Part shown: positions 36,286 through 54,119 of the stretch, piece after piece
Layout of the letters: each line of letters opens with the position of its first letter
Position numbering within the stretch: the first letter of the stretch is position 1
IMG/VR virus record: IMGVR_UViG_3300042895_001344
Coordinates: 124,001 to 188,000 of that record
DNA length: 64,000 bases
Direction: 5' to 3' (one strand)
The notes under the pieces: model-generated
Seen by the model: the letters and a program-made list of their open reading frames with translations, nothing else
Told to the model about the DNA's origin: nothing
Databases searched by the model: none
Made by a program: the position numbers and the translations under genes

Positions 36286-37035
36286 ATGAATAATTTTATA
36301 AAACAGGTAATTGAGGAGAAATTTGCTTCAAAAGCACAACAAAGGTTCTTCTACGCTAAGGCGAATGAAAAGGGTAAACCCAAGAAAGAAAAGAAGAAAT
36401 GGTCTAAATGGGCTAAGGAGTTCTCCGATAAAACAGATTATGATGAAATCCCCGATAAAGTAGAGAAAGAGGAAGAAGTAGATGAAATCGTGGACGGTGC
36501 CGGTAATTTTGCTAAAAGTAAAAAACCAACTAACTCAAGAGCTGAAGTAACATCAAATTCAACAACTGATGAATTTGTATTAACAGGAGCGGGTCAATCG
36601 TCTATATCACCAAAATTAGGTATGGGTTTTAGAAGATATTGGGGTGAGTCTGATATGAGTAAAGCATTAGGTGCTGAAGATACAATTATGGATGATGCTA
36701 ATTATGAAGAAGCTAAAAAGAAATTTATTGAGTTGGGTGTAACTGACCCAAAGGAATTGGAAGATAGATTAGGACAAATGGGATATGATCCAAAATTACC
36801 AGACGATAAGGTGAGATTGGTAGAAAACCCTAAAAAATTCATGGAAGAATACATAGATAATCTTTTAAAACAAAAAGGAAAAGATAATGATGTATTACCC
36901 AAAGAAGAAGAGGTTGAGGAGATTGAAATCAATCCAATAGTTGTAAAACAAATAAAATCACTTAAAAATAGTATGAAAACTTATGGTCTTAAACCAGACC
37001 ATATTTTGAAAGGACTTAAAGACGATAATGAATAA
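36286..37035 (+). CDS. Late hypothetical (probable head-associated) protein
   Basis: VIEE followed by KFASKAQQRFFYA basic module; late motif at 36263-36270. Confidence 0.7.
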   Translation: MNNFIKQVIEEKFASKAQQRFFYAKANEKGKPKKEKKKWSKWAKEFSDKTDYDEIPDKVEKEEEVDEIVDGAGNFAKSKKPTNSRAEVTSNSTTDEFVLTGAGQSSISPKLGMGFRRYWGESDMSKALGAEDTIMDDANYEEAKKKFIELGVTDPKELEDRLGQMGYDPKLPDDKVRLVENPKKFMEEYIDNLLKQKGKDNDVLPKEEEVEEIEINPIVVKQIKSLKNSMKTYGLKPDHILKGLKDDNE

Positions 37036-37519
37036 AGAGTTAAAAAATAGGGACTTTGATTTACCACAGAACATTTTAGATAAGATCAACCACACGGTTA
37101 CAGGTCTTAACGGTCAAAATGTGCATGGGGTAATGAGAGCAAAAAAACTTTTAACCGATAAAAAAGTAACATATGGTCAACTTAAACGTATTATTCATGA
37201 CATACAAGGTATGGATAAAGTTGCTGATAAAATTAGGTATGACTTGGCTGGTGGTGATTTAATGGATACGTGGTCAAAACAATATCTTCAGGGTGAGAGA
37301 GATTTAATTCAAAATAGAAAAGAAGGTAGAAAACAGGCTGATGATATTTCAAGTACAACGGGAGAAAGAAAAAATAGTTTCTTAACGAAACATACAAAAA
37401 AATCAAGTTGGTTACCGTCATTTAAATTTAATTCTAATTCAGAAAAAAATTCAGTGGCGTCAATAAAATTAACAGGTTTATTTGAACAAGTTAATAGAAT
37501 AAAAAAATTAATGTTATAA
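37028..37519 (+). CDS. Late hypothetical protein with C-terminal LFEQVNRIKKLML tag
   Basis: Overlaps the previous gene; tag shared with 38213..38962 and 52324..53085. Confidence 0.7.
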   Translation: MNKELKNRDFDLPQNILDKINHTVTGLNGQNVHGVMRAKKLLTDKKVTYGQLKRIIHDIQGMDKVADKIRYDLAGGDLMDTWSKQYLQGERDLIQNRKEGRKQADDISSTTGERKNSFLTKHTKKSSWLPSFKFNSNSEKNSVASIKLTGLFEQVNRIKKLML

Positions 37520-37520
37520 T

Positions 37521-38213
37521 ATGGCAACAAAATTAGATCAAATATCAGAACAGTTTAGAAAAGAATCTATTACAAGAAATTCTTATAACGAAAAGAATTT
37601 ATATAATAGTCAAAATATTAATGCATTATCTAACGGAGATGAAAAAGGTAAAGGTCAAATTGGTGACAGCGATAAAATCGGTTCAACCACTGACATTCAA
37701 AATAGAATTTCAAGTTTAGGTAGAAACACTTACAATGAAAATAATCAATATAGTTTAACTAATCCAAATGCATTAGCAGATGGAGATGAAAAAGGAAGAG
37801 GTCAAAAAGAAGATAATGTTGCAATTGGAACATCTGTAGATATTGCAAATAGAAATTTATTATTAAGTAAAAACACATATAAATTAAATAATAAATATGG
37901 TGTTAACAATCCTAATGCAATGTCCGACGGTGATGAAAAAGGTAAGGGACAAAAAGGTGAAACAGGTGAGGTTGGTTCAAGAACTGACGTGTTAAAAAGA
38001 ACTGAAAATTTAGTAAAAAATAAGTTTAATAAAAAGAATTTATATAATAGTACAAATCCTGATGCAATTTCTGACGGAGATGAAAATGGTAAAGGACCTA
38101 AAGATGAAAATGGAACTGTTGGTTCTAAAACTGATATTTTAAAAAGAACCGAAAATACTGGTAAGAATAGTTATAACTCTAAAAAAGAATATAATAGACA
38201 TCCAACAGAATAA
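37521..38213 (+). CDS. Tandem-repeat protein (four 49-aa units plus a partial fifth)
   Basis: NPNAxSDGDEKGKG core; GGA/GGT-GAT-GAA starts at 37635, 37782, 37929, 38076 (147-nt period). Confidence 0.85.
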   Translation: MATKLDQISEQFRKESITRNSYNEKNLYNSQNINALSNGDEKGKGQIGDSDKIGSTTDIQNRISSLGRNTYNENNQYSLTNPNALADGDEKGRGQKEDNVAIGTSVDIANRNLLLSKNTYKLNNKYGVNNPNAMSDGDEKGKGQKGETGEVGSRTDVLKRTENLVKNKFNKKNLYNSTNPDAISDGDENGKGPKDENGTVGSKTDILKRTENTGKNSYNSKKEYNRHPTE

Positions 38214-38962
38214 TGAGTTTTACAAATACAATCTTCAAAATACTTGAAGAACAAAATATTTTAAGGACATCAAAAACTAAACCTATAGTTGATTCAATCA
38301 AAAATAGGAATAAGATTTCTTTTTTTTATACTGGTCCAAGAAAACCTGCAAAAGATAGTGTTAAACCTGGTAAAAGAATTGATGCCGAAGCAGTGGCTTT
38401 AGGGTTAAGTAAAAGAGGTAATTTAGTTATTCGTGCATATGTCCAACCACCTTCAGTATCCAAAAAAGGATTTGATAAAACAGGTTGGAGAACTTTTATG
38501 GTTAGTAGAATGAGTGATTTAAGAATTAGCGATGAAAAATTTGATCAGAAGAGACCCGACTATAAAGAAGGTGATGATAAATCAATGAGTGTTACTTACG
38601 TAACAACAGATTGGACAAATAAACCTGAGGTTAAGAAACCAAGGATTGTTAAACCAAAACCAAGTGTCCCTTCGGCAACTGCAACAACTCAATCAACTCC
38701 AAGTGTTGACCCGACAACAACAACTACACCTGAGGAACCAAAAACAACAGAACTACCACAACCAAAAACTCAAACTAAACCTGAGAAAGTTGTACCAAAA
38801 CCTGAACCAACAAAAACAGAACCTGAAACAACAGAACCTAAAACACAAGAATTACCTCAACCAAAACAAACAGAAAAACCAGTTGCAAATCCTGAAGAGG
38901 ATGAGGAAAATAAAAATTTACAAGAAAGTATTAAAAATATTAAGCGTTTAATGTTTTCTTAA
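38213..38962 (+). CDS. Stand-alone WYL-domain protein with Pro/Thr/Glu/Lys linker and C-terminal LQESIKNIKRLM tag
   Basis: SIKNRNKISFFY...R..E..ALG......IRAY...GWRTFMVSRM fits the WYL fold; no HTH. Confidence 0.7.
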   Translation: MSFTNTIFKILEEQNILRTSKTKPIVDSIKNRNKISFFYTGPRKPAKDSVKPGKRIDAEAVALGLSKRGNLVIRAYVQPPSVSKKGFDKTGWRTFMVSRMSDLRISDEKFDQKRPDYKEGDDKSMSVTYVTTDWTNKPEVKKPRIVKPKPSVPSATATTQSTPSVDPTTTTTPEEPKTTELPQPKTQTKPEKVVPKPEPTKTEPETTEPKTQELPQPKQTEKPVANPEEDEENKNLQESIKNIKRLMFS

Positions 38963-38995
38963 AATAGTTTATTATAATATAAAATATTTATTAAC

Positions 38996-39565
38996 ATGTC
39001 ACAACAAGGATCAATATCATCTAACGATTTAATGAAAAAGTTAGTACAAGCAAAAAAAGTAATGAATAAAGTTGATGGTGGAAATTATGAAAGAGGTCAT
39101 GTTAATAGTGAAATGTTAAGATCTGATCCTTCAGAATTAATGGAAATGCAAACACCTCAACAACCTAATACAAGACCTGTGGGTGGTAATATGAGTATTG
39201 ATAAAATACAAAATTCAAAATTACCTGACGCAATTAAAAAAGCAATGATGGAAAACCCAATTCAACAAATTTCTTTAAATGATACTTTAGATATGGATTT
39301 CGTTAAAGGAGCAAAACGTTTAATGGAACAAGAAGGTGTTGCAACAAGACCGTCGGCACAACCAAAACAAACTATTGTTAATAATAATATTGACATGAAC
39401 GCAATCGCAGTTCTTATTGAAAATACAGTTCGTAAAGTAATGGATGAAAAATTAAATCAAATCCTTACAGCATCCACAACATCATCTATTAATGAAAATT
39501 TAGTACTGAAGGTGGGAGACTCTATTTTCAAGGGTAAAATTACAGGAGTAAATAAAGCCAAGTAA
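38996..39565 (+). CDS. Late hypothetical protein
   Basis: 189-aa ORF; TATTTATT at 38985-38992. Confidence 0.7.
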   Translation: MSQQGSISSNDLMKKLVQAKKVMNKVDGGNYERGHVNSEMLRSDPSELMEMQTPQQPNTRPVGGNMSIDKIQNSKLPDAIKKAMMENPIQQISLNDTLDMDFVKGAKRLMEQEGVATRPSAQPKQTIVNNNIDMNAIAVLIENTVRKVMDEKLNQILTASTTSSINENLVLKVGDSIFKGKITGVNKAK

Positions 39566-39566
39566 T

Positions 39567-39597
39567 TTTGTTTTTCCAATTTTTTTAGTTATATTTT
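39567..39597 (+). promoter_or_regulatory. Host-type promoter (TTTG - 19 nt - TATATTTT)
   Basis: Close to Bacteroidota -33 TTTG / -7 TAnnTTTG; upstream of a glycosyltransferase. Confidence 0.5.
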
Positions 39598-39617
39598 AGA
39601 CATATAAGTTAATTTAA

Positions 39618-40838
39618 ATGTCAAAAATTAGAATTTTAGCAATTCCATCGGATAAGCATGGTGTAGGTAAGTTTAGAATGATGGATCCATTTGTATTCAT
39701 TTCAGATAAACATTCGGAAGATATTCACGTAGATATTTCGTATAATGCGGAAGATAGAGATGATTATTTTTTAAACTACGATATTGTAGTTTTTCATACT
39801 TTTATCCATCAAACAAATCACGAACATAACATTAAAAGAATTAATTGGTTAAAATCCAAAGGTATTATTACTATTATGGATATTGATGACCTATGGTTTG
39901 TTGATCAAAGACATCCAATGTATCATGCAATTAAAATGAATAAAGTTGGTGAGATGAAAATTGACATGTTAAAGACAGTTGATTATGTTAGTACTACCAC
40001 TCCAATATTTGCAAAAACAATTAAAGATAAATTAAAAGTTAATAATGTTGTTGTTTTTCCAAATGCGGTAAATGAAGATGAACCACAGTTTCAAAATAAA
40101 CCTGTTCAATCAGATAAAGTTAGATTTGGTTGGTTAGGTGGGTCTTCTCATTTACATGATTTAGAGTTATTGTCTAATGGAATTTCTTCCACATATAATT
40201 TATTTAAAGATAAAGTACAATTTGTTTTATGTGGGTTTGATACAAGAGGTAGTGTTACTGTGATTGATCAGAGTGGTAAACAACAACAAAGACCTATACA
40301 ACCAACTGAAACAGTATGGTACAAATATGAAGGATTTTTCACAGATGATTTTAAAGTATTAAGTTCTGAATATAAAAATTATTTAGGAACATTTACTCAA
40401 GGAGATTACAACGACATAGATGAACCATATAGAAGAAGATGGACAAAAGATATTAACAGTTATGCAACAAACTATAACACGTTTGACGTATCATTAGCAC
40501 CGTTAGTTGATTCGGTATTCAACGCAAATAAATCACAATTAAAAGTAATTGAAGCGGGATTTTTTAAGAAGGCAATCATTGCAAGTGATGTTGATCCATT
40601 TACAATCGATTTAATTTCTGCGGTTGATGAAGGTAAGTTTAATGATAAAGGAAACGCATTATTAGTAGGTTCTAAAAAGAACCATAAAGATTGGGCAAAA
40701 CATATGAAACGTTTAGTTGAAAATCCTAATATGATTGAAGACTTAGGTAATCGTTTATATGAAACAGTTAAAGACACATACTCATTAAAGAAAGTATGTA
40801 AAGATAGAGTAGAATTTTTTAAATCAATAATAAAATAA
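39618..40838 (+). CDS. Glycosyltransferase, GT-B fold (GT4-like)
   Basis: GVGKFRM, IMDIDDLW, VSTTT, FPNA, RFGWLGGSSHLHDL, LAPL...FN..KSQLKVIEAG. Confidence 0.8.
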   Translation: MSKIRILAIPSDKHGVGKFRMMDPFVFISDKHSEDIHVDISYNAEDRDDYFLNYDIVVFHTFIHQTNHEHNIKRINWLKSKGIITIMDIDDLWFVDQRHPMYHAIKMNKVGEMKIDMLKTVDYVSTTTPIFAKTIKDKLKVNNVVVFPNAVNEDEPQFQNKPVQSDKVRFGWLGGSSHLHDLELLSNGISSTYNLFKDKVQFVLCGFDTRGSVTVIDQSGKQQQRPIQPTETVWYKYEGFFTDDFKVLSSEYKNYLGTFTQGDYNDIDEPYRRRWTKDINSYATNYNTFDVSLAPLVDSVFNANKSQLKVIEAGFFKKAIIASDVDPFTIDLISAVDEGKFNDKGNALLVGSKKNHKDWAKHMKRLVENPNMIEDLGNRLYETVKDTYSLKKVCKDRVEFFKSIIK

Positions 40839-40844
40839 AACAAC

Positions 40845-41081
40845 ATGCATTATTTAGTTACAATCGGTTATGAGACCGAACAAATGGACAGAGAAGGAAA
40901 CCCTCGTGTTAAAAAGTACAAGTACATTATCGAGGCAGAATCAGTAGAAGAAGCAACCATTGTTGCATCAAAATACAGAGCTGGTGACACACGTTCAAGT
41001 GAAAGTATTTCAGTTGCAAAAATGGCAATTGAATGTATCATTGACAGTAAGAACACACCCGAGTATTACAAAAGTAAATAA
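40845..41081 (+). CDS. Small protein resembling DUF4494 (Bacteroidota family)
   Basis: YLVTIGYETEQMDREGNPRVKKYKYIIEAESVEEA pattern, recognised from memory. Confidence 0.45.
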   Translation: MHYLVTIGYETEQMDREGNPRVKKYKYIIEAESVEEATIVASKYRAGDTRSSESISVAKMAIECIIDSKNTPEYYKSK

Positions 41082-41100
41082 CAATTAAACACCAACTGAT

Positions 41101-41316
41101 ATGGAATTTTATAGTCGTGAGATACAAATTATGCGTCAATCACAAAGTAAAATGGCATTGGAATATGTAACATCAGTTGGTGTTTCTGTTACTCTTGAGG
41201 AGTTGGTAAGGATTACCGATTTATTTGTGGAGATATGTTTACGTCCACAAGATGATAATCTTAAACAAAGAATTAAGGCATTAGATAAATGGTTAGAAGA
41301 AAAGAAAAATAAATAA
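41101..41316 (+). CDS. Small hypothetical protein
   Basis: 71-aa ORF within the operon. Confidence 0.6.
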   Translation: MEFYSREIQIMRQSQSKMALEYVTSVGVSVTLEELVRITDLFVEICLRPQDDNLKQRIKALDKWLEEKKNK

Positions 41317-41317
41317 A

Positions 41318-41950
41318 ATGGACCAAAAAGAAGCTGAAGAATATTTAAAAAAATTAGAAGATTTTGAAAAAACAATCGGAACCGATAATGAAGATGATTT
41401 AGATTTAAATTTTATGTCGGAGTTAAATGAATTGTTGACAAAATTACAAGAAGAATTACAACCAATTCAACCTGTTACTGAACAAAATATAATTAACACT
41501 CAACCAACGATGACGGGTGGGGGTGTTTTAGTTAAAGTAAAAAAATTAGATACAAATGCGGTTATTCCTTCATATTCAAAAGTTGGTGATGCTGGTATGG
41601 ATTTAACAATCACAAAAGAAATTGAAAATACATCATTTAGTGTATCGTATGGTTTTGGTATTGCAATGGAAATTCCTAAAGGTTATGTTGGGTTAGTATT
41701 TCCTCGTTCATCAGTTAGAAATCAAGATTTAATATTATCAAATTGTGTTGGTGTTATTGATAGTGGATATAGAGGTGAATTACAAGCAACATTTAAGAAA
41801 ACTCAAGGTTTGGATTCAATTAAATATAAAGTGGGTGAAAGAGGTGCACAGATTATCATATTACCTTATCCTACTATATATATGACTGAAGTTCCTGAAT
41901 TATCAGATACTGAAAGAGGTAGTGGTGGATTTGGATCTACGGGAAAATAG
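41318..41950 (+). CDS. dut: Trimeric dUTPase with N-terminal helical extension
   Basis: GDAGMDL, FPRSS, GVIDSGYRGE, GAQII, RGSGGFGSTG. Confidence 0.95.
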   Translation: MDQKEAEEYLKKLEDFEKTIGTDNEDDLDLNFMSELNELLTKLQEELQPIQPVTEQNIINTQPTMTGGGVLVKVKKLDTNAVIPSYSKVGDAGMDLTITKEIENTSFSVSYGFGIAMEIPKGYVGLVFPRSSVRNQDLILSNCVGVIDSGYRGELQATFKKTQGLDSIKYKVGERGAQIIILPYPTIYMTEVPELSDTERGSGGFGSTGK

Positions 41951-41953
41951 TGA

Positions 41954-41961
41954 TATTTATA
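41954..41961 (+). promoter_or_regulatory. Late motif TATTTATA
   Basis: Upstream of phoH. Confidence 0.7.
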
Positions 41962-41993
41962 AACAATAAACGGATCATTTAAAACTATCAACT

Positions 41994-42725: not shown

Positions 42726-42762
42726 TATTTACTTATAATTCAATTCGTTGTATATTTTTACA

Positions 42763-44680: not shown

Positions 44681-45460
44681 ATGAAAAATATAACAGTAAT
44701 TTTACCTGTACATAGACTAGATGGCATTTATAAAGAAATGTTAGATAATTCGATTAAATCAGTTGAACAATTTCATAATGATGTTAACTTATCAATAGTA
44801 TGTCCACCATCATTAAAAACAGAATTAGTAAATTTATCTGAAGTTTTAGAAATTGAAGTTATTTCTAACAATGGTAAAACTGATTTTTGTTCTCAAGTAA
44901 ATTTGGGAATTGAAAAATGTAAAACTGAATGGTTTAGTATTTTAGAAATTGATGATGAGTATAAATCAATTTGGTTAAAATCAACAAACGAATATGTTAA
45001 AACATATACCGATGTTGATGTATTTTTACCTGTAGTTAAGGATATTAATGTTGATGGAAATTTTGTAAGTTTTACAAATGAATCAACTTGGGCATATGGG
45101 TTTACTGAAAAACAAGGTATATTGGATAATGAAGTTTTATTAGATTTTCAAAACTATCAAATTAGTGGTGGACTTTATAAAACACAAGTTATTAAAGATA
45201 ATGGTTCATTAAAAGAAAATATCAAGTTAACATTTGGTTATGAGTTTTTATTAAGATTAACACATAACAATATTAAGGTTATGACCGTACCAAGAGTAGG
45301 ATATCAACACTTAAACTTTAGAGAGGATTCGTTATTTTGGTCATATAAAAACGATGAAACTAATAAGATTAGTGAAGATGAGGCTAAGTTTTGGTTGGAG
45401 ACGGCAAAGAAGGAATTTTTCTTTAAAAATAAACGAGATGTAAATTATGAAATAGCTTAA
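44681..45460 (+). CDS. Glycosyltransferase family 2 (GT-A)
   Basis: ITVILPVH, FCSQVNLGIE, WFSILEIDDEY (DxD-like), YEFLLRL. Confidence 0.8.
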   Translation: MKNITVILPVHRLDGIYKEMLDNSIKSVEQFHNDVNLSIVCPPSLKTELVNLSEVLEIEVISNNGKTDFCSQVNLGIEKCKTEWFSILEIDDEYKSIWLKSTNEYVKTYTDVDVFLPVVKDINVDGNFVSFTNESTWAYGFTEKQGILDNEVLLDFQNYQISGGLYKTQVIKDNGSLKENIKLTFGYEFLLRLTHNNIKVMTVPRVGYQHLNFREDSLFWSYKNDETNKISEDEAKFWLETAKKEFFFKNKRDVNYEIA

Positions 45461-46161
45461 TGCCAAGACCAAGAACCCAAAAAATATATTTTGGGGAGGA
45501 TCAAGAGAAGGCGGTAGTCAATTACTTAGAAAGTACTGATGAAGCAGAAAAAAATAAGATATTCAATGAATATTTACGTGAACCCCTAATTATAATGGTC
45601 GAATCAATTATTCGACGTTATAAACTTTATAGAAAAGATATGGAATTTGAAGAGATTCATACAGACACCATGTCCTTTCTTATAACAAAGATCAACAAGT
45701 TTGATCATACCAAGAATACCAAAGCATATTCTTATTTTGGTACCATCTGTAAAAACTACCTTATGGGTGCAATACAGAAGGATACAAAGGAACAAAACAG
45801 ACAAGTATCGTATGATGATATATCCTCAGATTTTGAAGATAGTAAAGACCTTTCATATGTAATTGACGAATTCGTAGTTGATTACGCATCTGTAATTGTA
45901 AAACTTACCGTGGATTTAGAAAATTTTGTGGAAAAGGAAAAAAACCTATCTGATAATGAAAGAAAACTGGGTTATGCATTATTAGAAATTTTTGGAAACT
46001 TCGATAAGATATTTCAAGTAGGAGATGGTAATAAATTCAATAAGAACCTCATTTTACTCTCTTTAAGAGAAATGACCTCATTATCAACAAAAGAGATTAG
46101 AGTCTCCCTAAAACGTTACAAGAAATTATATGACGGTATTTTGGGTGGGTTTTTAGAATAA
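45460..46161 (+). CDS. Phage late sigma factor (T4 gp55-like)
   Basis: IYF...KAVVNY...MVESII...KINKFD...KAYSYFGTICKNY matches the gp55/sigma region-2 pattern. Confidence 0.7.
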   Translation: MPRPRTQKIYFGEDQEKAVVNYLESTDEAEKNKIFNEYLREPLIIMVESIIRRYKLYRKDMEFEEIHTDTMSFLITKINKFDHTKNTKAYSYFGTICKNYLMGAIQKDTKEQNRQVSYDDISSDFEDSKDLSYVIDEFVVDYASVIVKLTVDLENFVEKEKNLSDNERKLGYALLEIFGNFDKIFQVGDGNKFNKNLILLSLREMTSLSTKEIRVSLKRYKKLYDGILGGFLE

Positions 46162-46172: not shown

Positions 46173-46175
46173 GAT

Positions 46176-46556: not shown

Positions 46557-48490
46557 TGTTTGACAAATTAAAGACCAAAATTGATTTAATTCAGAAAAGT
46601 GTTGATAGTGCATCAGTTAAAATGGAAATTAATTCTGATGACTTTATTAAAAAACATGCTCCTAAATTACCAAATTTAGATGCTAAATTAGAACAGTTTA
46701 AATCTAAATTAGCAAACAAAAAAAAGAAAAAACAAAATCAAAAAAATATTTTTGAGGAAGTTATTAGTGTAGTAAATAAATTTTTAGAAGCGGGTAGAAA
46801 AGTTAATGATTCAAGTAGATTTCAATCTACTCAAAGATTAAGACAACACGTTATTGATTCTGTAGAAGTCACATCTAATTCCGCAAAACAAATTTTAATG
46901 GATTGCGTTAAAAGTGCGTTTTTTGCAAATGGAGGAATATGTGGTACTGATCGATTTCTTACAGGTGCCGATATGGACTCTGTAGTTATTTCACCAAAAG
47001 AGATTGATTTTTTAAATATGTTTAGAGTTCCACCAAAAAGTGATTATGGTGCAATAATGTATGAAAACCCCAAAAGAACGGGGGGTAATAAAGTTCAAGT
47101 AAATACAGGACTATATAATTCATTTACAGGAGGAACATTTGAATATGAAACACCAAGTAATAAAACATTATTTACATCAACTTGGAATACAAGTGATCAA
47201 ACATTTCAAATAAGTGGATTAACACAGGGTCCAGGTCTTGGACAATATGGTATTATTAAAGTAGAAGATTTCTTTAATGATTATTATTCAAATATAGAAA
47301 TGCCAGATTTAAATGAAATTGTAAAGAAAGCGATGTTACTTACTTTAAAGGCGGCTAGTGTCAGTGCAGATAAAACCGGTGTAAAAGTCGGAGGATCTGC
47401 AACAGGAATGGAAAATCCTTTAGATTTTACCCCTTCATTAGATGAGGCAATTAATAACTTGGAAAGAATGTTAAATAAATTGTTTGCTTTTTGTAATAAC
47501 CAAACCGAACAATTGAGTGGACAAACTCCAACAAATCTATTTCACGAAAATGAAGAACCCGATGAATTTTATTTTGATTTTGATGACGTTGAAGGAATTG
47601 ATATAGATTCTGAAGATGCGAGAAGAAGAAAAGTTTTAAAATTTGTGGACTGTAACAACTTTGAGGTTCCTTATAATACGGTTCATATTGAGGACTTTAT
47701 TTATTTAGAAGATAAAACGGATCTAAGAACATTGATAGACGGTGCATTAAATAAAGCTGCGTCAGATGCATATGAACAATCTAATTTTGCAATTGACTTA
47801 CCTAGTTTTCAATTATCCATAAATTTATCTTTTATCTTCAATATACCTAAGGCCTTAATAATGAGTGTAATATCACCTAAGATGTTTTTACCATTTGTAA
47901 TAATTTATAAATTATTCACAGCGGGAGCAAAACAATTGATATTCGATGTAAAAACAATAATGAAATTATTGAAAAAGATTTTCTTATGTACAATTAACCA
48001 ATTGTTTTGGAAATTTTTACGTGAGTTTTGGAAAAGAGTTAAAGCCGACCTTAAGAATTTTTTAAAAAGAATAATACAAAAAATATTAAGAGATAAGTTT
48101 AGAAGATATTATATAGTAATTGCCGCGTTGATTGCATTATTAAAAAGAATAATTGAAACTGGTATAAATAACTGTGCGGATTTAATTGGTGCAATTGGTG
48201 CTGCAATTGACGGCGCATTAAGTGCATCGGGGGGTTTAAACATACCAAACGTCCTTTTATTAATTGCAGATAAATTACCTGGTTTTAGTGCGGTTAAAAC
48301 ATCTATGGACGTTAATGAAAAAATGGAAGCGATGGGGATTCCAACAGGAGATGTAAATGGAGAACCTAACTATCACCTACTATCACATTCAGCGGCGATA
48401 GAGGGACTCGCCGATAATTTAGCAAAAACACCATTTATATCAATACCTAAAGCATCAGGTATACCGGTTGGTGCATTAATGAAACATTAA
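46556..48490 (+). CDS. Large hypothetical structural protein (644 aa)
   Basis: In the late operon ahead of the spike gene. Confidence 0.6.
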   Translation: MFDKLKTKIDLIQKSVDSASVKMEINSDDFIKKHAPKLPNLDAKLEQFKSKLANKKKKKQNQKNIFEEVISVVNKFLEAGRKVNDSSRFQSTQRLRQHVIDSVEVTSNSAKQILMDCVKSAFFANGGICGTDRFLTGADMDSVVISPKEIDFLNMFRVPPKSDYGAIMYENPKRTGGNKVQVNTGLYNSFTGGTFEYETPSNKTLFTSTWNTSDQTFQISGLTQGPGLGQYGIIKVEDFFNDYYSNIEMPDLNEIVKKAMLLTLKAASVSADKTGVKVGGSATGMENPLDFTPSLDEAINNLERMLNKLFAFCNNQTEQLSGQTPTNLFHENEEPDEFYFDFDDVEGIDIDSEDARRRKVLKFVDCNNFEVPYNTVHIEDFIYLEDKTDLRTLIDGALNKAASDAYEQSNFAIDLPSFQLSINLSFIFNIPKALIMSVISPKMFLPFVIIYKLFTAGAKQLIFDVKTIMKLLKKIFLCTINQLFWKFLREFWKRVKADLKNFLKRIIQKILRDKFRRYYIVIAALIALLKRIIETGINNCADLIGAIGAAIDGALSASGGLNIPNVLLLIADKLPGFSAVKTSMDVNEKMEAMGIPTGDVNGEPNYHLLSHSAAIEGLADNLAKTPFISIPKASGIPVGALMKH

Positions 48491-48493
48491 GAT

Positions 48494-48697
48494 ATGGAAA
48501 GTCAAAAATTAATTGAAATTGCAAACGATGTAGAAAATAAATCTAATAAAGATTTAATGATTGTTGCGGATGAATTAAATGAGGAATTTGAAAAAACTAA
48601 AGAATTAATTATTGATTTAACCAGACATTTAGATGGTGTTGAAAGTTTATATAATAAGGTTAATAAAGAAATAGAAAAAAGATATACAGGGAAATGA
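48494..48697 (+). CDS. Small coiled-coil protein
   Basis: 67 aa heptad pattern; coupled to the next gene. Confidence 0.6.
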   Translation: MESQKLIEIANDVENKSNKDLMIVADELNEEFEKTKELIIDLTRHLDGVESLYNKVNKEIEKRYTGK

Positions 48698-50208
48698 AAA
48701 TAATAGATATTGGTAAATGTATTGATAATGTTGATCCTTTAGGTATTGGTAGAATAAGGGTTAGTCGTTATAACGAATATACGGGACAGAAAGAAGGTGC
48801 GATCGACTATGAACCATGGAGTGATAGAGATTTATTTATTGCCAATCCTTTCTTACCTTCTAATGTCAATTTTATTCCTGAGATTAATCAATCTGTAAAA
48901 ATAATACAATACAATACTGATAAAGATACAGTAAACGTTGAGTACATTGCCGGTCCATTTACAACGATGTATGATTATAACGGACAAACATTCTCACAAC
49001 AAATTGCAAATACCACTTATGGTACTAACGTTAAACATAAAGCTAATATTAGAAATTCGACAGGTGAATATATAAATAAAAAATCTGAAAATACATTTGC
49101 AAAAGAAAAAGATTTTGCAATATATGGTAAGAGTGGTTCTGATGTTCTTTTTACAGAAAATGGATTACAATTGAGAGGTGGTAAATTATTATCCAAAGAG
49201 GCGGCCAGTACTGTGAATAGACAAACTATGTTAGATTATCCTTTAATGGCTAAAAAGTCATCAAGGATTTATTTGAAAAAATTCCCTAAAAAAATGAACT
49301 TAGAGGAGGTTTTAACTACCGAAAATATAAGTGAAAACAAAGATTTAAATTATATTATTGAATATGATGTAAATAGTTTTGTAAATGATGCAACGGGTTA
49401 TACTATTAGTTTGTATGTTTATAAAGTAAACGGGGCGTTAGGTGATCTATTTAAAACAAATTATTTTACCGAAAATACCGAGGTTCAATCTTCTTTAATT
49501 AAGTTAATTAATGATGACAACACGAACACAACACCCACTTATCAAATAACTGTAACATCAATATCCGACATATATAGAGAAATAAGAGATAAAATATTTT
49601 TAGTACACGACAAAGGATTAAATGAATTAAACACTCAATATCCTTCAGATGATATACATCCGTTCTTTTTTAGGCCATACACTAATTTTAAAAGATCTTT
49701 ATCGACTACGGACGAATTAAATAATAAACAAACTATTTTGAATGGAATTAACGTATTAAGAATTGGTCCTGGTGCTGGTTTAATATGGTCAGCAACAAGA
49801 GCAAAGGCGGAAGTTAATCCTGTTAATTCGATTGAGAAGGTTGCTAAAATTGATAATAATACTGCCGAACAAACATTTGGAGCTATGTTAGTGGATAAAC
49901 TTTATCTATTATCAACTGATTTAGGTACAAACGAATCTACCAATCCTGTACCATTTGTCGATTTAAATGGTTATGAATTATCTCAACAAGATTATATAGA
50001 AAAAATTGAACCTTCAACCTTTTCAACGGTAAGAGGTGAAAATCTATTAAAATTACTTAGTAAAATGATAGAAGTTATTTTTACTCATAGACATAATCCA
50101 TTAATGCCAATATCGGGTCAATATGATTACGATCATGGTAATGAACTTAAGGAACTTTTTAAGACTATTGAAAATGACATTTTAAATAAATCGATTAGAA
50201 TCAACTAA
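48694..50208 (+). CDS. Baseplate central spike (gp5/gpV-like)
   Basis: N-terminal OB-fold pattern CIDNVDPLGIGRIRV...PFLP...IPEINQSV; C-terminal THRH (HxH iron-binding tip motif). Confidence 0.75.
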   Translation: MKIIDIGKCIDNVDPLGIGRIRVSRYNEYTGQKEGAIDYEPWSDRDLFIANPFLPSNVNFIPEINQSVKIIQYNTDKDTVNVEYIAGPFTTMYDYNGQTFSQQIANTTYGTNVKHKANIRNSTGEYINKKSENTFAKEKDFAIYGKSGSDVLFTENGLQLRGGKLLSKEAASTVNRQTMLDYPLMAKKSSRIYLKKFPKKMNLEEVLTTENISENKDLNYIIEYDVNSFVNDATGYTISLYVYKVNGALGDLFKTNYFTENTEVQSSLIKLINDDNTNTTPTYQITVTSISDIYREIRDKIFLVHDKGLNELNTQYPSDDIHPFFFRPYTNFKRSLSTTDELNNKQTILNGINVLRIGPGAGLIWSATRAKAEVNPVNSIEKVAKIDNNTAEQTFGAMLVDKLYLLSTDLGTNESTNPVPFVDLNGYELSQQDYIEKIEPSTFSTVRGENLLKLLSKMIEVIFTHRHNPLMPISGQYDYDHGNELKELFKTIENDILNKSIRIN

Positions 50209-50213
50209 TTTGA

Positions 50214-50221
50214 TATTTATA
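50214..50221 (+). promoter_or_regulatory. Late motif TATTTATA
   Basis: Upstream of 50233. Confidence 0.75.
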
Positions 50222-50232
50222 ATAAAAAAGAG

Positions 50233-51654
50233 ATGTCATATATACGTTCCTATTTTGAGAAGAATAACACAATTATAAAGGGTTCAACCACAAATACCGC
50301 TAAAAATCCAACCACGGAGATTTATTACGGTAATAGCACTTTTTCTAAATTTATATTTAAGGTTGATTTCACAGATTTAATTGGAAAATTAAGTAATGGA
50401 GAATTGACTCTTACAGATATTGGTGTTAGTGGTAATACTGTATCACATACATTACACCTAACAAATTGTATATTTGGTGATGAGGGGTTTAAAGGTCAGG
50501 GTAGAAGTACTGGTAGACAAAGAGCGACCTCTTTTGATCTAATATTATTTGAAATTACCGAAGAATGGGATGAGGGTGTTGGTTTTGACTATGTGAATGC
50601 TCCCTCAGATACTACAGACGATAGTACAATTTTTGATCAAAACCCATCAAATTGGTACAGTAGAACGACTTTAGACGCTTGGTCAACATCAGGAATTTAT
50701 GCTGAAAACCCAACTGTGATAGGGACAATACATTTTGATAATGGAAATGAAAATATTGATTTTGATTTAACAACTTATATTAATCAAAAATTAAGAAATG
50801 AGGTATTAAATTTCGGTACTAAATTAAGTCAAATTAAGGGATTTGGATTGGCGTTTTCTTTACCTTATCAAGATCTCACACCTGAATATGATAAGTCAGT
50901 TTCGTTCTTTACAAAATATACACAAACATTTTTTGAACCTTACGTCGAGACATTTGTAAATGATAGAATTAACGATAATAGAACAAACTTTGCTGCGGGT
51001 GTTTATAATTACTTATATCTTTATGTTACTAAAGGTTCTAATTTTTATAATTTAGACACTATGCCGATAGTTAATGTTTTAGATTCAAATAACAACGTTA
51101 TTGATGGTTTAGGTAATCAACAAGAGGTTTCTAGAGTTAAAAAAGGTGTTTATAAAGTAAAATTAGGTATTGATGGTGATTTGTGTGACGGTAAAAAATT
51201 CTTTTACGATCAGTGGACAAACCTTTCGATTGACGGGGTTGAAATTGATGATGTGAAACAAAAATTTGTTCCTAAACCATTTACCTCACAATATACAATT
51301 GGGGAAAATCAAACGGAATTACAAAGATATAAAATACAATACTTTGGTATAAAACAAAACGAAAAGATTGTAAGAGGTGAATTGAGAAAAGTAGTTGTAA
51401 CCATTAAATCTATAGATATTCAAAAAGCCAACTTGTTTGATGAGGTTTATTTTAGAATGTTTATTAAGGAAGGTACTACAAATGTAAATGTACATGATTG
51501 GACATTGTTAGATAAAACTAATGAAAATTCGTTTCATTTTGACACTTCAGTTTATATCCCAAGAGAATATTTTATTGAAATTAAAGCTAAAACTCACACT
51601 GAAGAAATATTCTATAATGAACATATTAAATTTGAGATTGTCTCAGAAAAATAA
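50233..51654 (+). CDS. Virion structural protein (DNRLRE/CBM-like beta domain possible)
   Basis: LHLTNC...ITEEWDEG...SNW...W...G pattern; late motif upstream. Confidence 0.45.
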   Translation: MSYIRSYFEKNNTIIKGSTTNTAKNPTTEIYYGNSTFSKFIFKVDFTDLIGKLSNGELTLTDIGVSGNTVSHTLHLTNCIFGDEGFKGQGRSTGRQRATSFDLILFEITEEWDEGVGFDYVNAPSDTTDDSTIFDQNPSNWYSRTTLDAWSTSGIYAENPTVIGTIHFDNGNENIDFDLTTYINQKLRNEVLNFGTKLSQIKGFGLAFSLPYQDLTPEYDKSVSFFTKYTQTFFEPYVETFVNDRINDNRTNFAAGVYNYLYLYVTKGSNFYNLDTMPIVNVLDSNNNVIDGLGNQQEVSRVKKGVYKVKLGIDGDLCDGKKFFYDQWTNLSIDGVEIDDVKQKFVPKPFTSQYTIGENQTELQRYKIQYFGIKQNEKIVRGELRKVVVTIKSIDIQKANLFDEVYFRMFIKEGTTNVNVHDWTLLDKTNENSFHFDTSVYIPREYFIEIKAKTHTEEIFYNEHIKFEIVSEK

Positions 51655-51657
51655 AAC

Positions 51658-51665
51658 TATTTATA
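51658..51665 (+). promoter_or_regulatory. Late motif TATTTATA
   Basis: Upstream of operon 51670-54119. Confidence 0.75.
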
Positions 51666-51669
51666 TATT

Positions 51670-52323
51670 ATGAAAGTAATTAAACTAAAAGAAAACGATC
51701 TTAGAAAATATATTGCTAAGATTATAAAGGAAAATCAATCAACCGAAAACTATATGTTTTTCAGTAATTTACAACAAATACATAGACAATGTGAGATGTT
51801 GATGAAAATGGATCCACAAGAGTTAGATCAAATTATTAAAAACGGTCACGATTGGGCGGACGATCATGTATCTGAAGCTAAGAACAATATGGATCAAGTT
51901 TTTGATTTCTTTATGAATGAAACTAAAAGTAAAGATAAACAAGATGTTACTGCCGATATGGATCAGTTTAGTATGAACGAAGAAGGACAACTTGACGAAA
52001 AATGTTGGGATGGGTATAAACAAGTTGGTAGTAAGAAAAAAGGTGGAAAAATGGTACCGAATTGTGTACCTGTAAGTGAAGCAAGTAGTCCTGCACAACA
52101 AGCTGCAATTGCAATCAATATGAAGAAAAAGGGTGTTGAACCTAAAAATGAGTCATACGGTGAAATAGACGAAAGTAAGAACTGTCCAACAGACCCTGCG
52201 AAGTGGGCAGCATCAAAGGCTAAAGCTAAATCTAAATTTGACGTCTATCCTTCAGCATATGCAAATGGATTCGCGGCGAAAGATTATAAAGCAAAAGGTG
52301 GTGGTTGGAGAAAATGTAAATAG
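51670..52323 (+). CDS. Modular basic protein (probable internal head protein)
   Basis: Leader MKVIKLKENDLRKYIAKIIKE; modules KCWDGYKQVG...PNCVP, SSPAQQAAIAI, CPTDPAKW...GGGW, each starting after xxE. Confidence 0.65.
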   Translation: MKVIKLKENDLRKYIAKIIKENQSTENYMFFSNLQQIHRQCEMLMKMDPQELDQIIKNGHDWADDHVSEAKNNMDQVFDFFMNETKSKDKQDVTADMDQFSMNEEGQLDEKCWDGYKQVGSKKKGGKMVPNCVPVSEASSPAQQAAIAINMKKKGVEPKNESYGEIDESKNCPTDPAKWAASKAKAKSKFDVYPSAYANGFAAKDYKAKGGGWRKCK

Positions 52324-53085
52324 ATGAATTTAGAAGAGAACATACAAAGAATTAAACAAATGATGATTTCTGAGGAGATGGTACAATCTGATGCTTGGAA
52401 GTCTTTAAAGAAGACATTAGATGTTCTTAAAAAGAAGAAAAAAGTTTTACTATTAAGTTGTTCTAATAGACACAATTGGGACGAAAATGATATTGATATA
52501 CCAAAATCTAAAATGATTGCGATGTATCTTAACGAAGAATTAGGTGACAAATCCGTTTTAATAGATGTACCTGAACTTAAGATATTTCCTTGTGAAGGTA
52601 ACGTATCAAGAAAAGACGGAGATTCATGTGGAGTATTAAAATCTAAACTTGAAGACAAGGACAAAAATCCTTCAGGTCATCATAGATGTTGGGCAAGTAT
52701 AAACAACAAATCAGATGAACTTTGGAAAATATCTAAAGAACTATTTGAATCGGACGCGGTTATATTTTTTAGTTCAATAAGGTGGGGACAGACAAATATG
52801 TATTATCAAAATCTAATTGAAAGACTTAATTGGATTGAAAATAGACATACAACACAAAATGAATCAAACATAGTAAAAGATATTGAATCTGGATATATTT
52901 GTACGGGACATAATTGGAATGGAAGTAACGTTGTTGATCTACAAAAACAAGTTCATTCATTTTATGGATTCAAACCAAACGATGATATATATTGGAATTG
53001 GCAGTATACTAAAGATATTAACGACGAAAGTCAAAAATCATATAAAGATTCTCATGATAAATTCATAAAAGACACTAAATTATAA
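52324..53085 (+). CDS. Flavodoxin-fold NAD(P)H-dependent FMN reductase / iron-sulfur flavoprotein-like protein with N-terminal tag
   Basis: LLLSCSNR, PCEG...SCG...RCW, ESDAVIFFSSIRWG...QNLIERL; extra leader MNLEENIQRIKQMM. Confidence 0.75.
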   Translation: MNLEENIQRIKQMMISEEMVQSDAWKSLKKTLDVLKKKKKVLLLSCSNRHNWDENDIDIPKSKMIAMYLNEELGDKSVLIDVPELKIFPCEGNVSRKDGDSCGVLKSKLEDKDKNPSGHHRCWASINNKSDELWKISKELFESDAVIFFSSIRWGQTNMYYQNLIERLNWIENRHTTQNESNIVKDIESGYICTGHNWNGSNVVDLQKQVHSFYGFKPNDDIYWNWQYTKDINDESQKSYKDSHDKFIKDTKL

Positions 53086-53086
53086 T

Positions 53087-53365
53087 ATGAGAATAATAAT
53101 AACCGAAGACCAAAAAAATAAAATTATGAATAGTAATGATTGGGTGGAAACAAACGGTAAATTAATTAAAACATTTTATTTTAAAGATTATAAGGAAGTT
53201 ATGTCATTTGCTAATGAGGTGATGAAAATTGCCAACAAACAAAATCATCACCCCGATATGACGGTTCATTATGATAATGTAAAGTTATCAATTACAGACC
53301 ACGATAAGGGTAAGGTGTCCGATAAGTGTCATAAATTTGTTAATGAGGTAAATAAAATTATATAA
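53087..53365 (+). CDS. phhB: Pterin-4-alpha-carbinolamine dehydratase with short leader
   Basis: W...KLIKTFYFKDY...F...HHPD...TDHDKG.VS; leader MRIIITEDQ. Confidence 0.85.
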   Translation: MRIIITEDQKNKIMNSNDWVETNGKLIKTFYFKDYKEVMSFANEVMKIANKQNHHPDMTVHYDNVKLSITDHDKGKVSDKCHKFVNEVNKII

Positions 53366-53366
53366 C

Positions 53367-54119
53367 ATGAAAATTATTGTTTCAAAGGAAGATAAAGAAT
53401 ATATAAACGAATGTCTTAAATCAGGTGAGGTTTTAAAAGAAGATCTTACAAGGTGGTTTAAAGAGAAGTGGGTAGATGTTAGTAAAAAGGTAGATGGTAA
53501 ACACCCACCTTGTGGTAGAAAAGATGCTGATGGTAAATCGTATCCTAAATGTAGACCTTCTAAAAAAGTGTCTAAAGAAACTCCAAAAGTTGCCTCTTCA
53601 TATGATAAAAAAGAAAAGAAAGCAATGACTTCACAAAAAAGAAGAGCAGAAAAGAAAGACCCTAAAGTGGGTAAGGGTAATAAACCAACAATGACTAAAT
53701 TTGATGAGAATATGGAAAAGAGAACAATAATTCAAATATCTGAAGATCAATTCGAAAGACTATTTGAATACAACGAAGAAACTCCTGTATTGATATATGA
53801 GGATGAGTTTGGATCAATAGAAAATACTAAATTTGAATACGACTTAGGTCTTTTAAATGAGGCTGAGTATCAAGGACGTAAAGTTCAACTTGGTAAAATC
53901 ATGCAAGGGGACGTAAAGAAATCAAAAGTTTATGTTAAGAACGATAAAGGTAAAGTCGTTAAAGTAAACTTTGGTTTTGGTGGTAAATCCGCTAAAGGTA
54001 AACGAATGGTTATTAAGAAAAATAACCCTGCAAGACGTAAATCATTTAGAGCACGTATGAATTGTGATAATCCAGGTCCTCGTTGGAAACCAAGATATTG
54101 GGCTTGTAGAACTTGGTAA
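53367..54119 (+). CDS. Modular basic protein (probable internal head protein)
   Basis: LKE then DLTRWFKEKWVD...PCGR...YPKCRP module; LNE then AEYQGRKV...RRKSFRARMNC...RYWACRTW module. Confidence 0.7.
   Translation: MKIIVSKEDKEYINECLKSGEVLKEDLTRWFKEKWVDVSKKVDGKHPPCGRKDADGKSYPKCRPSKKVSKETPKVASSYDKKEKKAMTSQKRRAEKKDPKVGKGNKPTMTKFDENMEKRTIIQISEDQFERLFEYNEETPVLIYEDEFGSIENTKFEYDLGLLNEAEYQGRKVQLGKIMQGDVKKSKVYVKNDKGKVVKVNFGFGGKSAKGKRMVIKKNNPARRKSFRARMNCDNPGPRWKPRYWACRTW

What the first reader, a model, noticed from the sequence alone, without database searches (positions are those of the whole stretch)
36286..54119. Candidate head-cargo tagging system: shared short helical tags on unrelated late proteins, including enzymes
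Seen: three unrelated proteins carry a near-identical helix, LFEQVNRIKKLML (C-terminus of 37028..37519), LQESIKNIKRLMF (C-terminus of the WYL protein) and LEENIQRIKQMM (N-terminus of the flavoprotein, 52324). Three others carry a second motif: KVIKLKENDLRKYIAKIIKE (51670), RIIITEDQKNKI (N-terminus of the pterin dehydratase) and IIQISEDQFERLFE (inside 53367..54119). All are in TATTTAT-led operons. The tags sit outside the recognisable enzyme folds and contain or abut (I/L/V)-x-E. Known: T4 internal proteins enter the prohead via a short capsid-targeting leader that gp21 removes after (I/L)-x-E. Inference: this phage uses portable N- or C-terminal tags to load a cargo set (FMN reductase, pterin dehydratase, WYL domain, basic peptides) into the head for delivery at infection.
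Basis: partly seen in the sequence, partly recalled or inferred. Interest (0 to 1): 0.85.

Follow-up and report, generated by a model that had tools for sequence, protein, structure and literature searches.

The report
Scaffold-like terminal tags on phage proteins
A 12-residue helix at the very start or end of unrelated proteins of this uncultured T4-like phage resembles the tail end of the phage's presumed head-scaffold protein, so it is most likely an address label that loads those proteins into the virus head.

Summary
Motif 1 (L-x-E-x-[IV]-x-[RN]-I-K-x-[LM]-M) is real. It occurs three times in the window against 0 expected, always at a protein terminus. A scan of viral contigs found 126 more copies, all in-frame at an extreme N- or C-terminus, in 33 unrelated protein clusters. 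It sits at noise level in 596 Gb of cellular genomes.

New evidence links it to the head. The gene between the gp21-like protease and the gp23-like capsid gene, the presumed scaffold, ends in the same core (…FSRIKEMMRKIK*). That ending is conserved in 80 relatives. In sister lineages the scaffold ends …RMQKLAGIIK*, and the same peptide, followed by an I-x-E site, opens 36 small orphan proteins. The two flavours never mix.

The best reading is therefore a capsid-targeting tag that copies the scaffold tail, a variant of the T4 capsid targeting sequence. Packaging, cleavage and delivery are untested.

Motif 2 is a genuine, widespread N-terminal module, but it has no link to head proteins. The pterin dehydratase "tag" is the fold's own first helix.

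The flavoprotein, WYL and TATTTAT claims hold.

The parts
37028..37519 (+). 163-aa protein with no known domain that carries a C-terminal motif-1 tag
   Evidence: No Pfam or PHROG hit. The family has 27 tagged members in viral contigs, and all of them are C-tagged.
37478..37513 (+). Motif-1 tag LFEQVNRIKKLM, one residue before the stop codon
38213..38962 (+). WYL/Sm-like domain (about aa 20-135), then a hypervariable Pro/Glu/Lys/Thr linker, then a C-terminal motif-1 tag
   Evidence: Structure model, Foldseek against PDB, and the 21-member alignment A2, which shows a conserved domain, a variable linker and an invariant tag.
38918..38953 (+). Motif-1 tag LQESIKNIKRLM, two residues before the stop codon
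52324..53085 (+). Flavodoxin-like (WrbA/NQO/AzoR-type) protein with an N-terminal motif-1 tag followed by I-S-E
   Evidence: The tag is conserved across alignment A3 and across clade loci.
52330..52365 (+). Motif-1 tag LEENIQRIKQMM, starting at residue 3
56284..57582 (-). Presumed prohead scaffold: 432 aa, the middle part 46% Asp+Glu, assigned by its position between the protease and the capsid gene
   Evidence: Synteny and composition. It is homologous to the gene upstream of the MCP in phage immuto (E 2e-12). There is no detectable homology to T4/Syn9 gp22.
56287..56334 (-). Scaffold C-terminal tail ENPQFSRIKEMMRKIK*, which carries the tag core
   Evidence: It is conserved in 80 related loci and ranks 4th of 20,477 proteome positions, directly after the three tags.
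57672..58355 (-). gp21-family prohead protease. Its C-terminal tail SRMSKLMGNLDTFLSK* is weakly tag-like, and in some relatives it matches the loose tag core (KMKNLM).
   Evidence: phrog_207 at 1e-39, BLASTP to T4 gp21 at 2e-21, tails.
54504..56261 (-). gp23-like major capsid protein, a candidate receptor for the tail and the tags
36263..36269 (+). TATTTAT late-promoter-like element leading the 36286-39565 operon
51658..51664 (+). TATTTAT element leading the 51670-54119 operon
51670..52323 (+). Basic mosaic protein with a true N-terminal motif-2 leader (aa 2-21, ending I-K-E)
53367..54119 (+). Fusion of DUF5872 with a 128-aa module whose first helix is the motif-2-like string at 53727-53768
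53087..53365 (+). Pterin-4a-carbinolamine dehydratase. It is not tagged, because the string is the fold's own N-terminal helix.
   Evidence: Pfam PF01329, 4.8e-18, residues 7-88

Best explanation
Motif 1 is a portable amphipathic helix of 12-17 residues (L-x-E-x-phi-x-R-phi-K/Q-x-L-M, or -L-A-G-I-I in sister lineages). It copies the C-terminal tail of the prohead scaffold protein.

Proposed mechanism, all inferred:
1. During prohead assembly the tail anchors the scaffold to a receptor. The receptor could be the inner face or N-arm of the gp23-like shell, or other scaffold tails.
2. Any protein carrying the same peptide at a free end docks at that receptor and is enclosed.
3. The gp21-family protease then cuts at the phi-x-E site that always lies between the tag and the body of the protein. 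That site follows N-terminal tags and lies inside or before C-terminal tags. Cutting frees the cargo inside the head.
4. The cargo leaves with the DNA at infection, as T4 internal proteins and Alt do.

In this window the cargo would be a flavodoxin-like oxidoreductase, a WYL-like nucleic-acid-binding protein and a 163-aa orphan protein.

Shown here: the motif, its strict terminal position, its spread over unrelated proteins, its restriction to viruses, its identity or similarity to the scaffold tail, the adjacent Glu sites, the protease gene and the late-type promoter context.
For: (1) The motif occurs 3 times in the window against 0 expected.

(2) Of 126 pattern matches in viral contigs, all were classed N- or C-terminal (46 N, 80 C). 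They fall in 33 unrelated clusters, and each cluster is consistently N- or C-tagged. Carriers include an M23+VanY peptidase, a GNAT, a DeoC-like aldolase and a PAP2 protein.

(3) The same pattern gives only 105 hits in 596 Gb of cellular genomes. They are almost all out-of-frame or internal, and six at most look phage-like.

(4) A loose core pattern run over 546,586 aa of clade ORFs gives 109 hits, of which 108 are terminal. 80 of these are the C-terminus of the gene directly upstream of the MCP, which ends AYE[NA]PQFxR[MI][KR]x[LM]MxK[IL]K*. Some protease C-termini also match. Some C-tags match the scaffold tail through to the stop codon: the peptidase tag ends RIKDLMKKII* and the scaffold ends RIKEMMRKIK*.

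(5) Covariation across lineages. In cultured Flavobacterium phage immuto the homologous scaffold (E 2e-12, with aligned C-termini) ends VSEQVSRWQKLAGIIK*. The only two other hits in its 160-kb genome are N-termini reading MKKQILSEQF[RK]RMQxLAGIITE.

A viral-contig scan for R-M-Q-x-L-A-G-I-[IV] gave 84 C-terminal hits. 79 of them are scaffold homologues, 79 sit next to an MCP gene, and 78 show both. It also gave 38 N-terminal hits. These come from 36 distinct small proteins with invariant R, M, Q, L, A, G, I, I and a Glu two residues later.

The flavours are mutually exclusive.

(6) Glu sites. 33 of 34 unique N-tags have phi-x-E within a few residues after L-M, whereas C-tags end 0-6 residues after L-M. 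LAGI-type scaffolds have a phi-x-E whose Glu lies 7 residues before the R in 55 of 70 cases.

(7) The protease is homologous to T4 gp21.

(8) The tagged genes lie in operons led by the TATTTAT element, which also precedes the head and tail genes.

(9) T4 precedent. The IPII/IPIII leader MKTYQEFIAEA resembles the N-terminus of the T4 scaffold gp22, MLKEQLIAEAQ. T4 capsid targeting sequences are 10-19-residue propeptides with affinity for the core (PMC9026906). Alt is cut at both ends (PMC5694885).
Against: There is no physical evidence. No cultured relative has a virion proteome, and tblastn of two tagged proteins found nothing in cultured phages.

The scaffold assignment rests on gene order, composition and conservation only. 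hhalign against T4/Syn9 gp22 gives 0.1% probability, and there is no PHROG hit.

In the window's own flavour the similarity between tag and scaffold is partial. The PSSM score of the scaffold tail is modest, and there is no fine-scale covariation between scaffold variant and flavoprotein tag.

One tagged protein is a PQ-loop membrane protein with a lipobox-like segment after the tag.

Mel-JY01 has the scaffold tail but no tagged proteins, and Syn9 lacks the motif altogether.

Only 57 of 120 tag-bearing loci could be tied to the window's clade.
Confidence: 0.6

Rival explanations
1. The tag does send proteins into the prohead, but they act only there, as auxiliary core or size-determining components or as enzymes working during assembly. 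They are then degraded or retained and are not delivered to the next host.
For: T4 gp67 and gp68 are core proteins that gp21 cuts to fragments (PMC5694885). The scaffold and the protease themselves carry the motif.
Against: The carriers include enzymes with no obvious assembly role: a flavodoxin-like reductase, a GNAT, and an M23+VanY wall hydrolase of the kind found among ejected proteins. The small orphan carriers resemble T4 internal proteins.
Confidence: 0.12
2. The helix is a general docking or oligomerisation peptide for some other phage hub, such as a replication or transcription factory, a chaperone or a coiled-coil partner. Its presence on the scaffold is incidental.
For: It is a terminal amphipathic helix with a heptad-like hydrophobic stripe. 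It appears on very diverse proteins. The scaffold call is by synteny only.
Against: 79 of 84 C-terminal LAGI-type copies are scaffold homologues, and 79 sit directly upstream of a capsid gene. The N-terminal copies acquire a Glu site that the scaffold copy lacks. The flavours track the scaffold flavour.
Confidence: 0.13
3. The helix is a membrane-targeting amphipathic helix like those at the ends of MinD, FtsA or MreB. It would hold proteins, and the membrane-bound prohead initiation complex, at the inner membrane.
For: Its position is strictly terminal. C-tags end in hydrophobic or basic residues (LMLL, LMFF, LMKKII). One carrier is a membrane protein.
Against: The net charge is about zero, with a conserved Glu. 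Residue-level conservation of R, K/Q and G across unrelated proteins points to a protein receptor. The LAGII flavour is weakly amphipathic.
Confidence: 0.07
4. The helix is a terminal degron or chaperone signal that times the stability of a set of phage proteins.
For: Degrons of AAA+ proteases work at either terminus. The tags sit on flexible linkers.
Against: This does not explain identity with the tail of the most abundant assembly protein, nor the Glu sites on the protein-facing side of the tag. The motif is absent from cellular genomes.
Confidence: 0.05
5. The three copies are chance or compositional similarity in an AT-rich genome.
For: The genome is about 30% G+C and rich in Lys, Ile and Asn.
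Against: 0 expected against 3 observed. There are hundreds of terminal copies elsewhere.
Confidence: 0.01
6. Motif 2 (MKK-I-I-R-L-T-E-S-D-L-x-R-I-V-K-R-V-I-x-E) is a second, independent capsid-targeting leader of the T4 type.
For: 36 of 78 unique hits start within 6 residues of the Met. One locus has four neighbouring genes with it. Most copies listed end in [IV]-x-E about 22 residues in, by inspection of the list. It is N-terminal like T4 leaders. It is found in the RIKxLM-flavour phages but not in immuto, Mel-JY01 or Syn9.
Against: No head protein carries it. 34 of 78 hits are internal.
Confidence: 0.3

Closest known systems
T4 capsid targeting sequence (leaders of IPI/II/III, Alt and gp24; Mullaney & Black 1996; reviewed in PMC9026906, PMC5694885, PMC3012670)
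   Same: It is a short terminal peptide shared by otherwise unrelated proteins and ends next to a (L/I)-x-E site. A gp21-family protease is encoded in the same head module. The carriers are small, fast-evolving orphans plus enzymes. The T4 leader also resembles a terminus of its own scaffold.
   Different: There is no evident sequence resemblance to MKTYQEFIAE (by eye; no alignment was run). The tag is used at either terminus, and two of the three window copies are C-terminal. It is modelled on the scaffold's C-terminal rather than N-terminal peptide. It is longer (12-17 aa). It is attached to a wider range of enzymes. Its function is untested.
C-terminal capsid-binding tails of scaffolds and maturation proteases (P22 gp8 helix-turn-helix; the herpesvirus UL26/UL26.5 shared C-terminal tail; the HK97 protease C-terminal targeting region). 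Recalled from established knowledge, not re-read here.
   Same: The motif sits at the extreme C-terminus of the scaffold. A related tail sits on the protease. The implied role is docking to the shell interior.
   Different: In those systems the tail is shared only by scaffold and protease, often through nested genes. Here it has been copied onto many unrelated genes, including as an N-terminal leader.
Encapsulin cargo-loading peptides
   Same: A short terminal peptide, N- or C-terminal, is joined by a flexible linker to unrelated enzymes and directs them inside an HK97-fold shell.
   Different: Encapsulins have no scaffold, protease, DNA or delivery step. Their consensus is different (Gly/Ser/Leu-rich). 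No homology is claimed.
P1 DarB N-terminal packaging signal (PMC9024508)
   Same: It is a terminal signal that is sufficient to send a large enzyme, or a reporter, into a myovirus head.
   Different: It is a single protein and a single phage, there is no shared motif family, and no relation to a scaffold tail is known.

Membership tests
T4-type capsid targeting sequence | Short terminal peptide shared by otherwise unrelated proteins of one phage | tested here: met
   3 proteins in the window and 33 unrelated clusters in viral contigs.
T4-type capsid targeting sequence | N-terminal position (propeptide) | tested here: not met
   Two of the three window copies, and 80 of 126 copies in viral contigs, are C-terminal.
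T4-type capsid targeting sequence | (L/I)-x-E processing site bounding the leader | tested here: met
   Sequence level only. phi-x-E follows 33 of 34 N-tags. The Glu of II-x-E is invariant in all 36 aligned LAGI-type N-tags. C-tags begin with L-x-E.
T4-type capsid targeting sequence | gp21-family prohead protease in the same genome | tested here: met
   phrog_207 at 1e-39. BLASTP to T4 gp21 at 2e-21, with the ELNHP and SSRG motifs aligned.
T4-type capsid targeting sequence | Tagged proteins are present in proheads or virions and are cleaved there | not testable with these tools
   There is no proteome for any relative. Cultured phage immuto would allow the test.
T4-type capsid targeting sequence | The tag is sufficient to package a foreign protein | not testable with these tools
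   This needs a bench experiment.
Scaffold C-terminal shell-binding tail | Conserved peptide at the extreme C-terminus of the scaffold gene next to the capsid gene | tested here: met
   80 clade loci. Of 84 LAGI-type C-terminal copies, 79 are scaffold homologues and 79 are adjacent to an MCP gene. The scaffold identity itself rests on synteny only.
Scaffold C-terminal shell-binding tail | Physical binding to the capsid protein | not testable with these tools
   No multimer prediction or binding assay was available.
Encapsulin cargo-loading peptide | Consensus sequence and an encapsulin shell gene next to the cargo | tested here: not met
   The motif is different, and the shell here is a gp23-type phage capsid with portal, terminase and protease.
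WYL domain (38213 protein) | Sm-like WYL fold | tested here: inconclusive
   Foldseek top hits are DriD, BrxR and PafBC (prob 1.0, E 1.6e-3 to 8e-3). There is no Pfam hit.
Flavodoxin-like FMN oxidoreductase (52324 protein) | Flavodoxin-like fold related to WrbA/NQO/AzoR | tested here: met
   Foldseek E 2e-5 to FMN-bound SP1951, followed by AzoR, NQO1/2, RosB and WrbA. JGI names the family accordingly. There is no Pfam hit at E<0.01. FMN binding was not tested.
Pterin-4a-carbinolamine dehydratase (53087 protein) | Pterin_4a domain | tested here: met
   PF01329 at 4.8e-18, residues 7-88 of 92.

The most novel reading that the evidence does not exclude
A large, abundant group of aquatic T4-like phages uses a readable packaging code. 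The C-terminal peptide of the scaffold has been copied onto the N- or C-termini of dozens of unrelated proteins, with a protease site on the protein-facing side. If so, the set of proteins loaded into the head and injected could be predicted from sequence alone in uncultured phages. It would be a natural phage counterpart of encapsulin cargo loading, and T4's own capsid targeting sequence would be a special case of scaffold-terminus mimicry.
Probability: 0.45. Interest if true: 0.85.

Novelty: new variant of a known kind. Interest (0 to 1): 0.72.

Why it matters
Which proteins a phage carries in its head and injects is hard to learn without a cultured phage and mass spectrometry. These proteins include anti-restriction factors, modifying enzymes and wall hydrolases. 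A sequence-defined tag tied to the scaffold tail would let predicted cargo be read from metagenomes, and here the relevant clade has hundreds to thousands of relatives.

It would suggest a simple route by which new cargo is recruited, namely copying the scaffold's docking peptide. It would widen the T4 capsid-targeting concept to C-terminal tags. It would also offer short natural tags for loading proteins into phage capsids. The cultured Flavobacterium phage immuto makes the idea directly testable.

Tried and rejected
- **Megablast and tblastn against cultured phages.** Megablast of the region, and tblastn of two tagged proteins, found no match.
- **Short tail query.** tblastn with a 25-aa scaffold tail returned only noise.
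- **Literature searches.** Searches for the motif strings and for scaffold-like cargo tags found nothing relevant.
- **Syn9 whole genome.** The motif is absent and gp22 ends differently. My recollection of a similar cyanophage motif was therefore not confirmed for Syn9.
- **Mel-JY01 whole genome.** It has the scaffold tail only and no tags.
- **Homology of the presumed scaffold to gp22.** BLASTP was weak, hhalign gave 0.1% probability, and PHROGs gave nothing.
- **Fine covariation inside the clade.** I looked for a link between scaffold variant (RIKEMM or RMKDLM) and flavoprotein tag and found none.
- **Clamp-binding tail idea.** I dropped it because the large tagged proteins are not polymerases. 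One is an M23+VanY peptidase and the others have no Pfam domain.
- **Pfam on 36 LAGI-type N-tagged proteins.** There were no hits.
- **Pterin dehydratase as tagged cargo.** Rejected.

Full report
**What the window is.** The window has about 30% G+C. It carries a T4-type head module on the minus strand:
- large terminase, 61742-63520;
- portal, 59846-61687;
- gp21-family protease, 57672-58355 (phrog_207 at 1e-39; BLASTP to T4 gp21 at 2e-21);
- a 432-aa acidic protein, 56284-57582;
- a gp23-like capsid protein, 54504-56261.

The plus-strand block named in the finding holds glycosyltransferases, dUTPase, PhoH, a gp55-like sigma factor and baseplate-size genes. No cultured phage is close. In viral metagenomes 582 contigs encode a relative of the capsid protein, and the best 80 are 75-100% identical. 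Contigs run up to 316 kb.

**Motif 1 is real.** A degenerate DNA pattern finds exactly these three against 0.00 expected. The DNA differs at synonymous positions.

All 126 matches were classed N- or C-terminal. N-terminal copies begin just after the start Met, and C-terminal copies end 0-6 residues before the stop. The carrier ORFs range up to 810 aa.

After masking the tag the carriers fall into 33 unrelated clusters, each consistently N- or C-tagged. They include an M23+VanY peptidase, a GNAT, a DeoC-like aldolase, a soluble PAP2-like protein and a PQ-loop membrane protein.

As a control I ran the same pattern over 596 Gb of cellular genomes. It gave only 105 hits. Nearly all are out of frame or internal, for example in response regulators and aminotransferases, and six at most look phage-like. 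The motif is therefore virus-specific, and host homologues do not carry it.

**The tags are appended to folds.**
- *38213 protein.* It has a confident domain at about aa 20-135, a disordered linker at aa 153-226 and a C-terminal helix at aa 229-248. The domain's best PDB matches are WYL domains. In 21 homologues the domain and the tag are conserved while the linker is hypervariable.
- *52324 protein.* It has a flavodoxin-like core whose best matches are FMN enzymes. The core is preceded by the tag helix at aa 3-19.
- *Pterin dehydratase.* It is different: the Pfam profile already covers residue 7 onward, so its "tag" is part of the fold.

**The link to the head.** A loose core pattern ([ILVMF]-x-[RKN]-[ILM]-[KR]-x-[LM]-M) was run over 2,598 ORFs from the window and 80 related loci. 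It gives 109 hits, of which 108 are terminal.

Eighty of these are the extreme C-terminus of the gene between the protease and the capsid gene. That gene ends AYE[NA]PQFxR[MI][KR]x[LM]MxK[IL]K* in every relative. Several protease C-termini also match.

In the window's proteome the scaffold tail ranks fourth of 20,477 positions with a tag-derived matrix, directly after the three tags. The score itself is modest. Some C-tags match the scaffold tail through to the stop codon: RIKDLMKKII* on the peptidase and RIKEMMRKIK* on the scaffold.

**Covariation in other lineages.** In cultured Flavobacterium phage immuto the gene upstream of the capsid gene is homologous to the window's (E 2e-12, with the C-termini aligned). 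It ends VSEQVSRWQKLAGIIK*. The only other matches in that 160-kb genome are the N-termini of two small proteins, MKKQILSEQF[RK]RMQxLAGIITE….

Of its 125 hits, 84 are C-terminal, 38 N-terminal and 3 were classed internal.
- Of the 84 C-terminal hits, 79 are scaffold homologues, 79 sit directly next to a capsid gene, and 78 show both.
- The N-terminal hits come from 36 distinct small proteins with invariant R, M, Q, L, A, G, I, I and a Glu two residues later. None has a Pfam domain.
- The scaffold copies end in K-stop and lack that Glu.

The two flavours never co-occur in the 2.4 Mb examined, nor in immuto.

Two further genomes fit the picture. Mel-JY01 has the scaffold tail (…ERMKKLAGIVK*) but no tagged proteins. 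A 484-kb uncultured phage has …SRMQKLADIS* and nearby small ORFs with RLQELAGI-like strings. Syn9 and T4 lack the motif.

**Processing sites.**
- N-tags are followed by phi-x-E within a few residues in 33 of 34 unique cases.
- C-tags begin with L-x-E and follow acidic linkers.
- LAGI-type scaffolds have a phi-x-E whose Glu lies 7 residues before the R in 55 of 70 cases.

A Glu site therefore always lies on the side of the tag that faces the rest of the protein. This fits the T4 gp21 rule, with Alt cut at ITE-6 and LTE-619 (PMC5694885). It is sequence evidence only.

**Expression context.** TATTTAT lies 11-48 nt upstream of about 20 of 55 window genes, including terminase, portal, protease and scaffold. 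It also leads the two operons that hold the tagged genes.

**Comparison with T4.** T4 capsid targeting sequences are 10-19-residue N-terminal propeptides with affinity for the core (PMC9026906). Read from the genome, the IPII/IPIII leader MKTYQEFIAEA resembles the gp22 N-terminus MLKEQLIAEAQ. Copying a scaffold terminus may therefore be a general way to make such tags. The present system differs in motif, in using either terminus, and in copying the scaffold's C-terminal peptide.

**Motif 2.** The module MKK-[IV]-[IV]-R-L-T-E-S-D-L-x-R-I-V-K-R-V-I-x-E is real. 36 of 78 unique hits lie within 6 residues of the Met, and one locus has four adjacent genes with it. It is absent from immuto, Mel-JY01 and Syn9. 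No head protein carries it. In the 53367 family it marks the start of a fused 128-aa module. A role as a second leader is possible but unsupported.

**Weak points.**
- The scaffold is called by position, composition and conservation, not by homology.
- Tag-scaffold similarity in the window's own flavour is partial.
- One carrier is a membrane protein.
- Only 57 of 120 tag loci could be tied to the clade.
- Nothing physical is known.

**Verdict.** It is a new variant of a known kind.

Noticed in passing
window 37521-38213 (+): This 230-aa protein is made of four tandem repeats of about 48 aa, each containing a string such as NPNA[LM][AS]DGDEKG[KR]GQ. It lies between the two C-tagged genes, and a gene ending …YPDF occupies the same slot in several related loci.
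   Followed up: partly
window, about 20 sites, e.g. 36263-36269, 51658-51664, and upstream of 61742-63520 and 59846-61687: TATTTAT(A) sits 11-48 nt upstream of many structural genes. It is a candidate late promoter, to be compared with T4's TATAAATA. A gp55-like sigma factor is encoded at 45460-46161.
   Followed up: partly
L306:7707-8948 (MW353176.1, immuto35A_203): This gene is annotated 'DNA polymerase phi-like protein', but by position and by homology to the window's acidic protein it is the head scaffold. The acidic tract probably caused the label.
   Followed up: yes
window 51670-52323 and 53367-54119 (+): Both proteins are mosaics of small basic, Cys-containing modules: CWDGY…PNCVP, YPSAYANG…GGGWRKC, DUF5872 and a phrog_7595 C-terminal module. 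Pieces of them match many different phage orphan families.
   Followed up: partly
L087 (four genes between 7860 and 12096): Four neighbouring genes all begin MKK[VI][VI]RLTESDL… (motif 2). This resembles a small multigene family that shares one leader.
   Followed up: no
L320 and L442 (T4 NC_000866): The T4 IPII/IPIII leader MKTYQEFIAEA and the gp22 N-terminus MLKEQLIAEAQ share [FL]IAEA. The gp24 N-terminus is MAKINELLRES.
   Followed up: partly
L441 (LR756508.1, 484-kb uncultured phage): The scaffold homologue ends …SRMQKLADIS*. Two small ORFs about 17 kb upstream carry GRLQELAGIEQD and SRFQELAGVLSED near their N-termini.
   Followed up: partly
L437:8125-8469: The N-terminal RMQMLAGIITE tag is followed 10 residues later by a second, partial copy (RLMELAGL).
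   Followed up: no
window 34505-36253 (-): This 582-aa protein, divergent from the tagged operon, contains long Pro/Thr linkers (…PTATPTVTPSPTPVPTSTP…). It has no family hit and is probably a fibre or decoration protein.
   Followed up: no
L070:6015-6662: The N-terminal motif-1 tag is followed by a lipobox-like hydrophobic segment and a PQ-loop membrane domain. It is the one tagged protein that does not fit soluble head cargo.
   Followed up: partly
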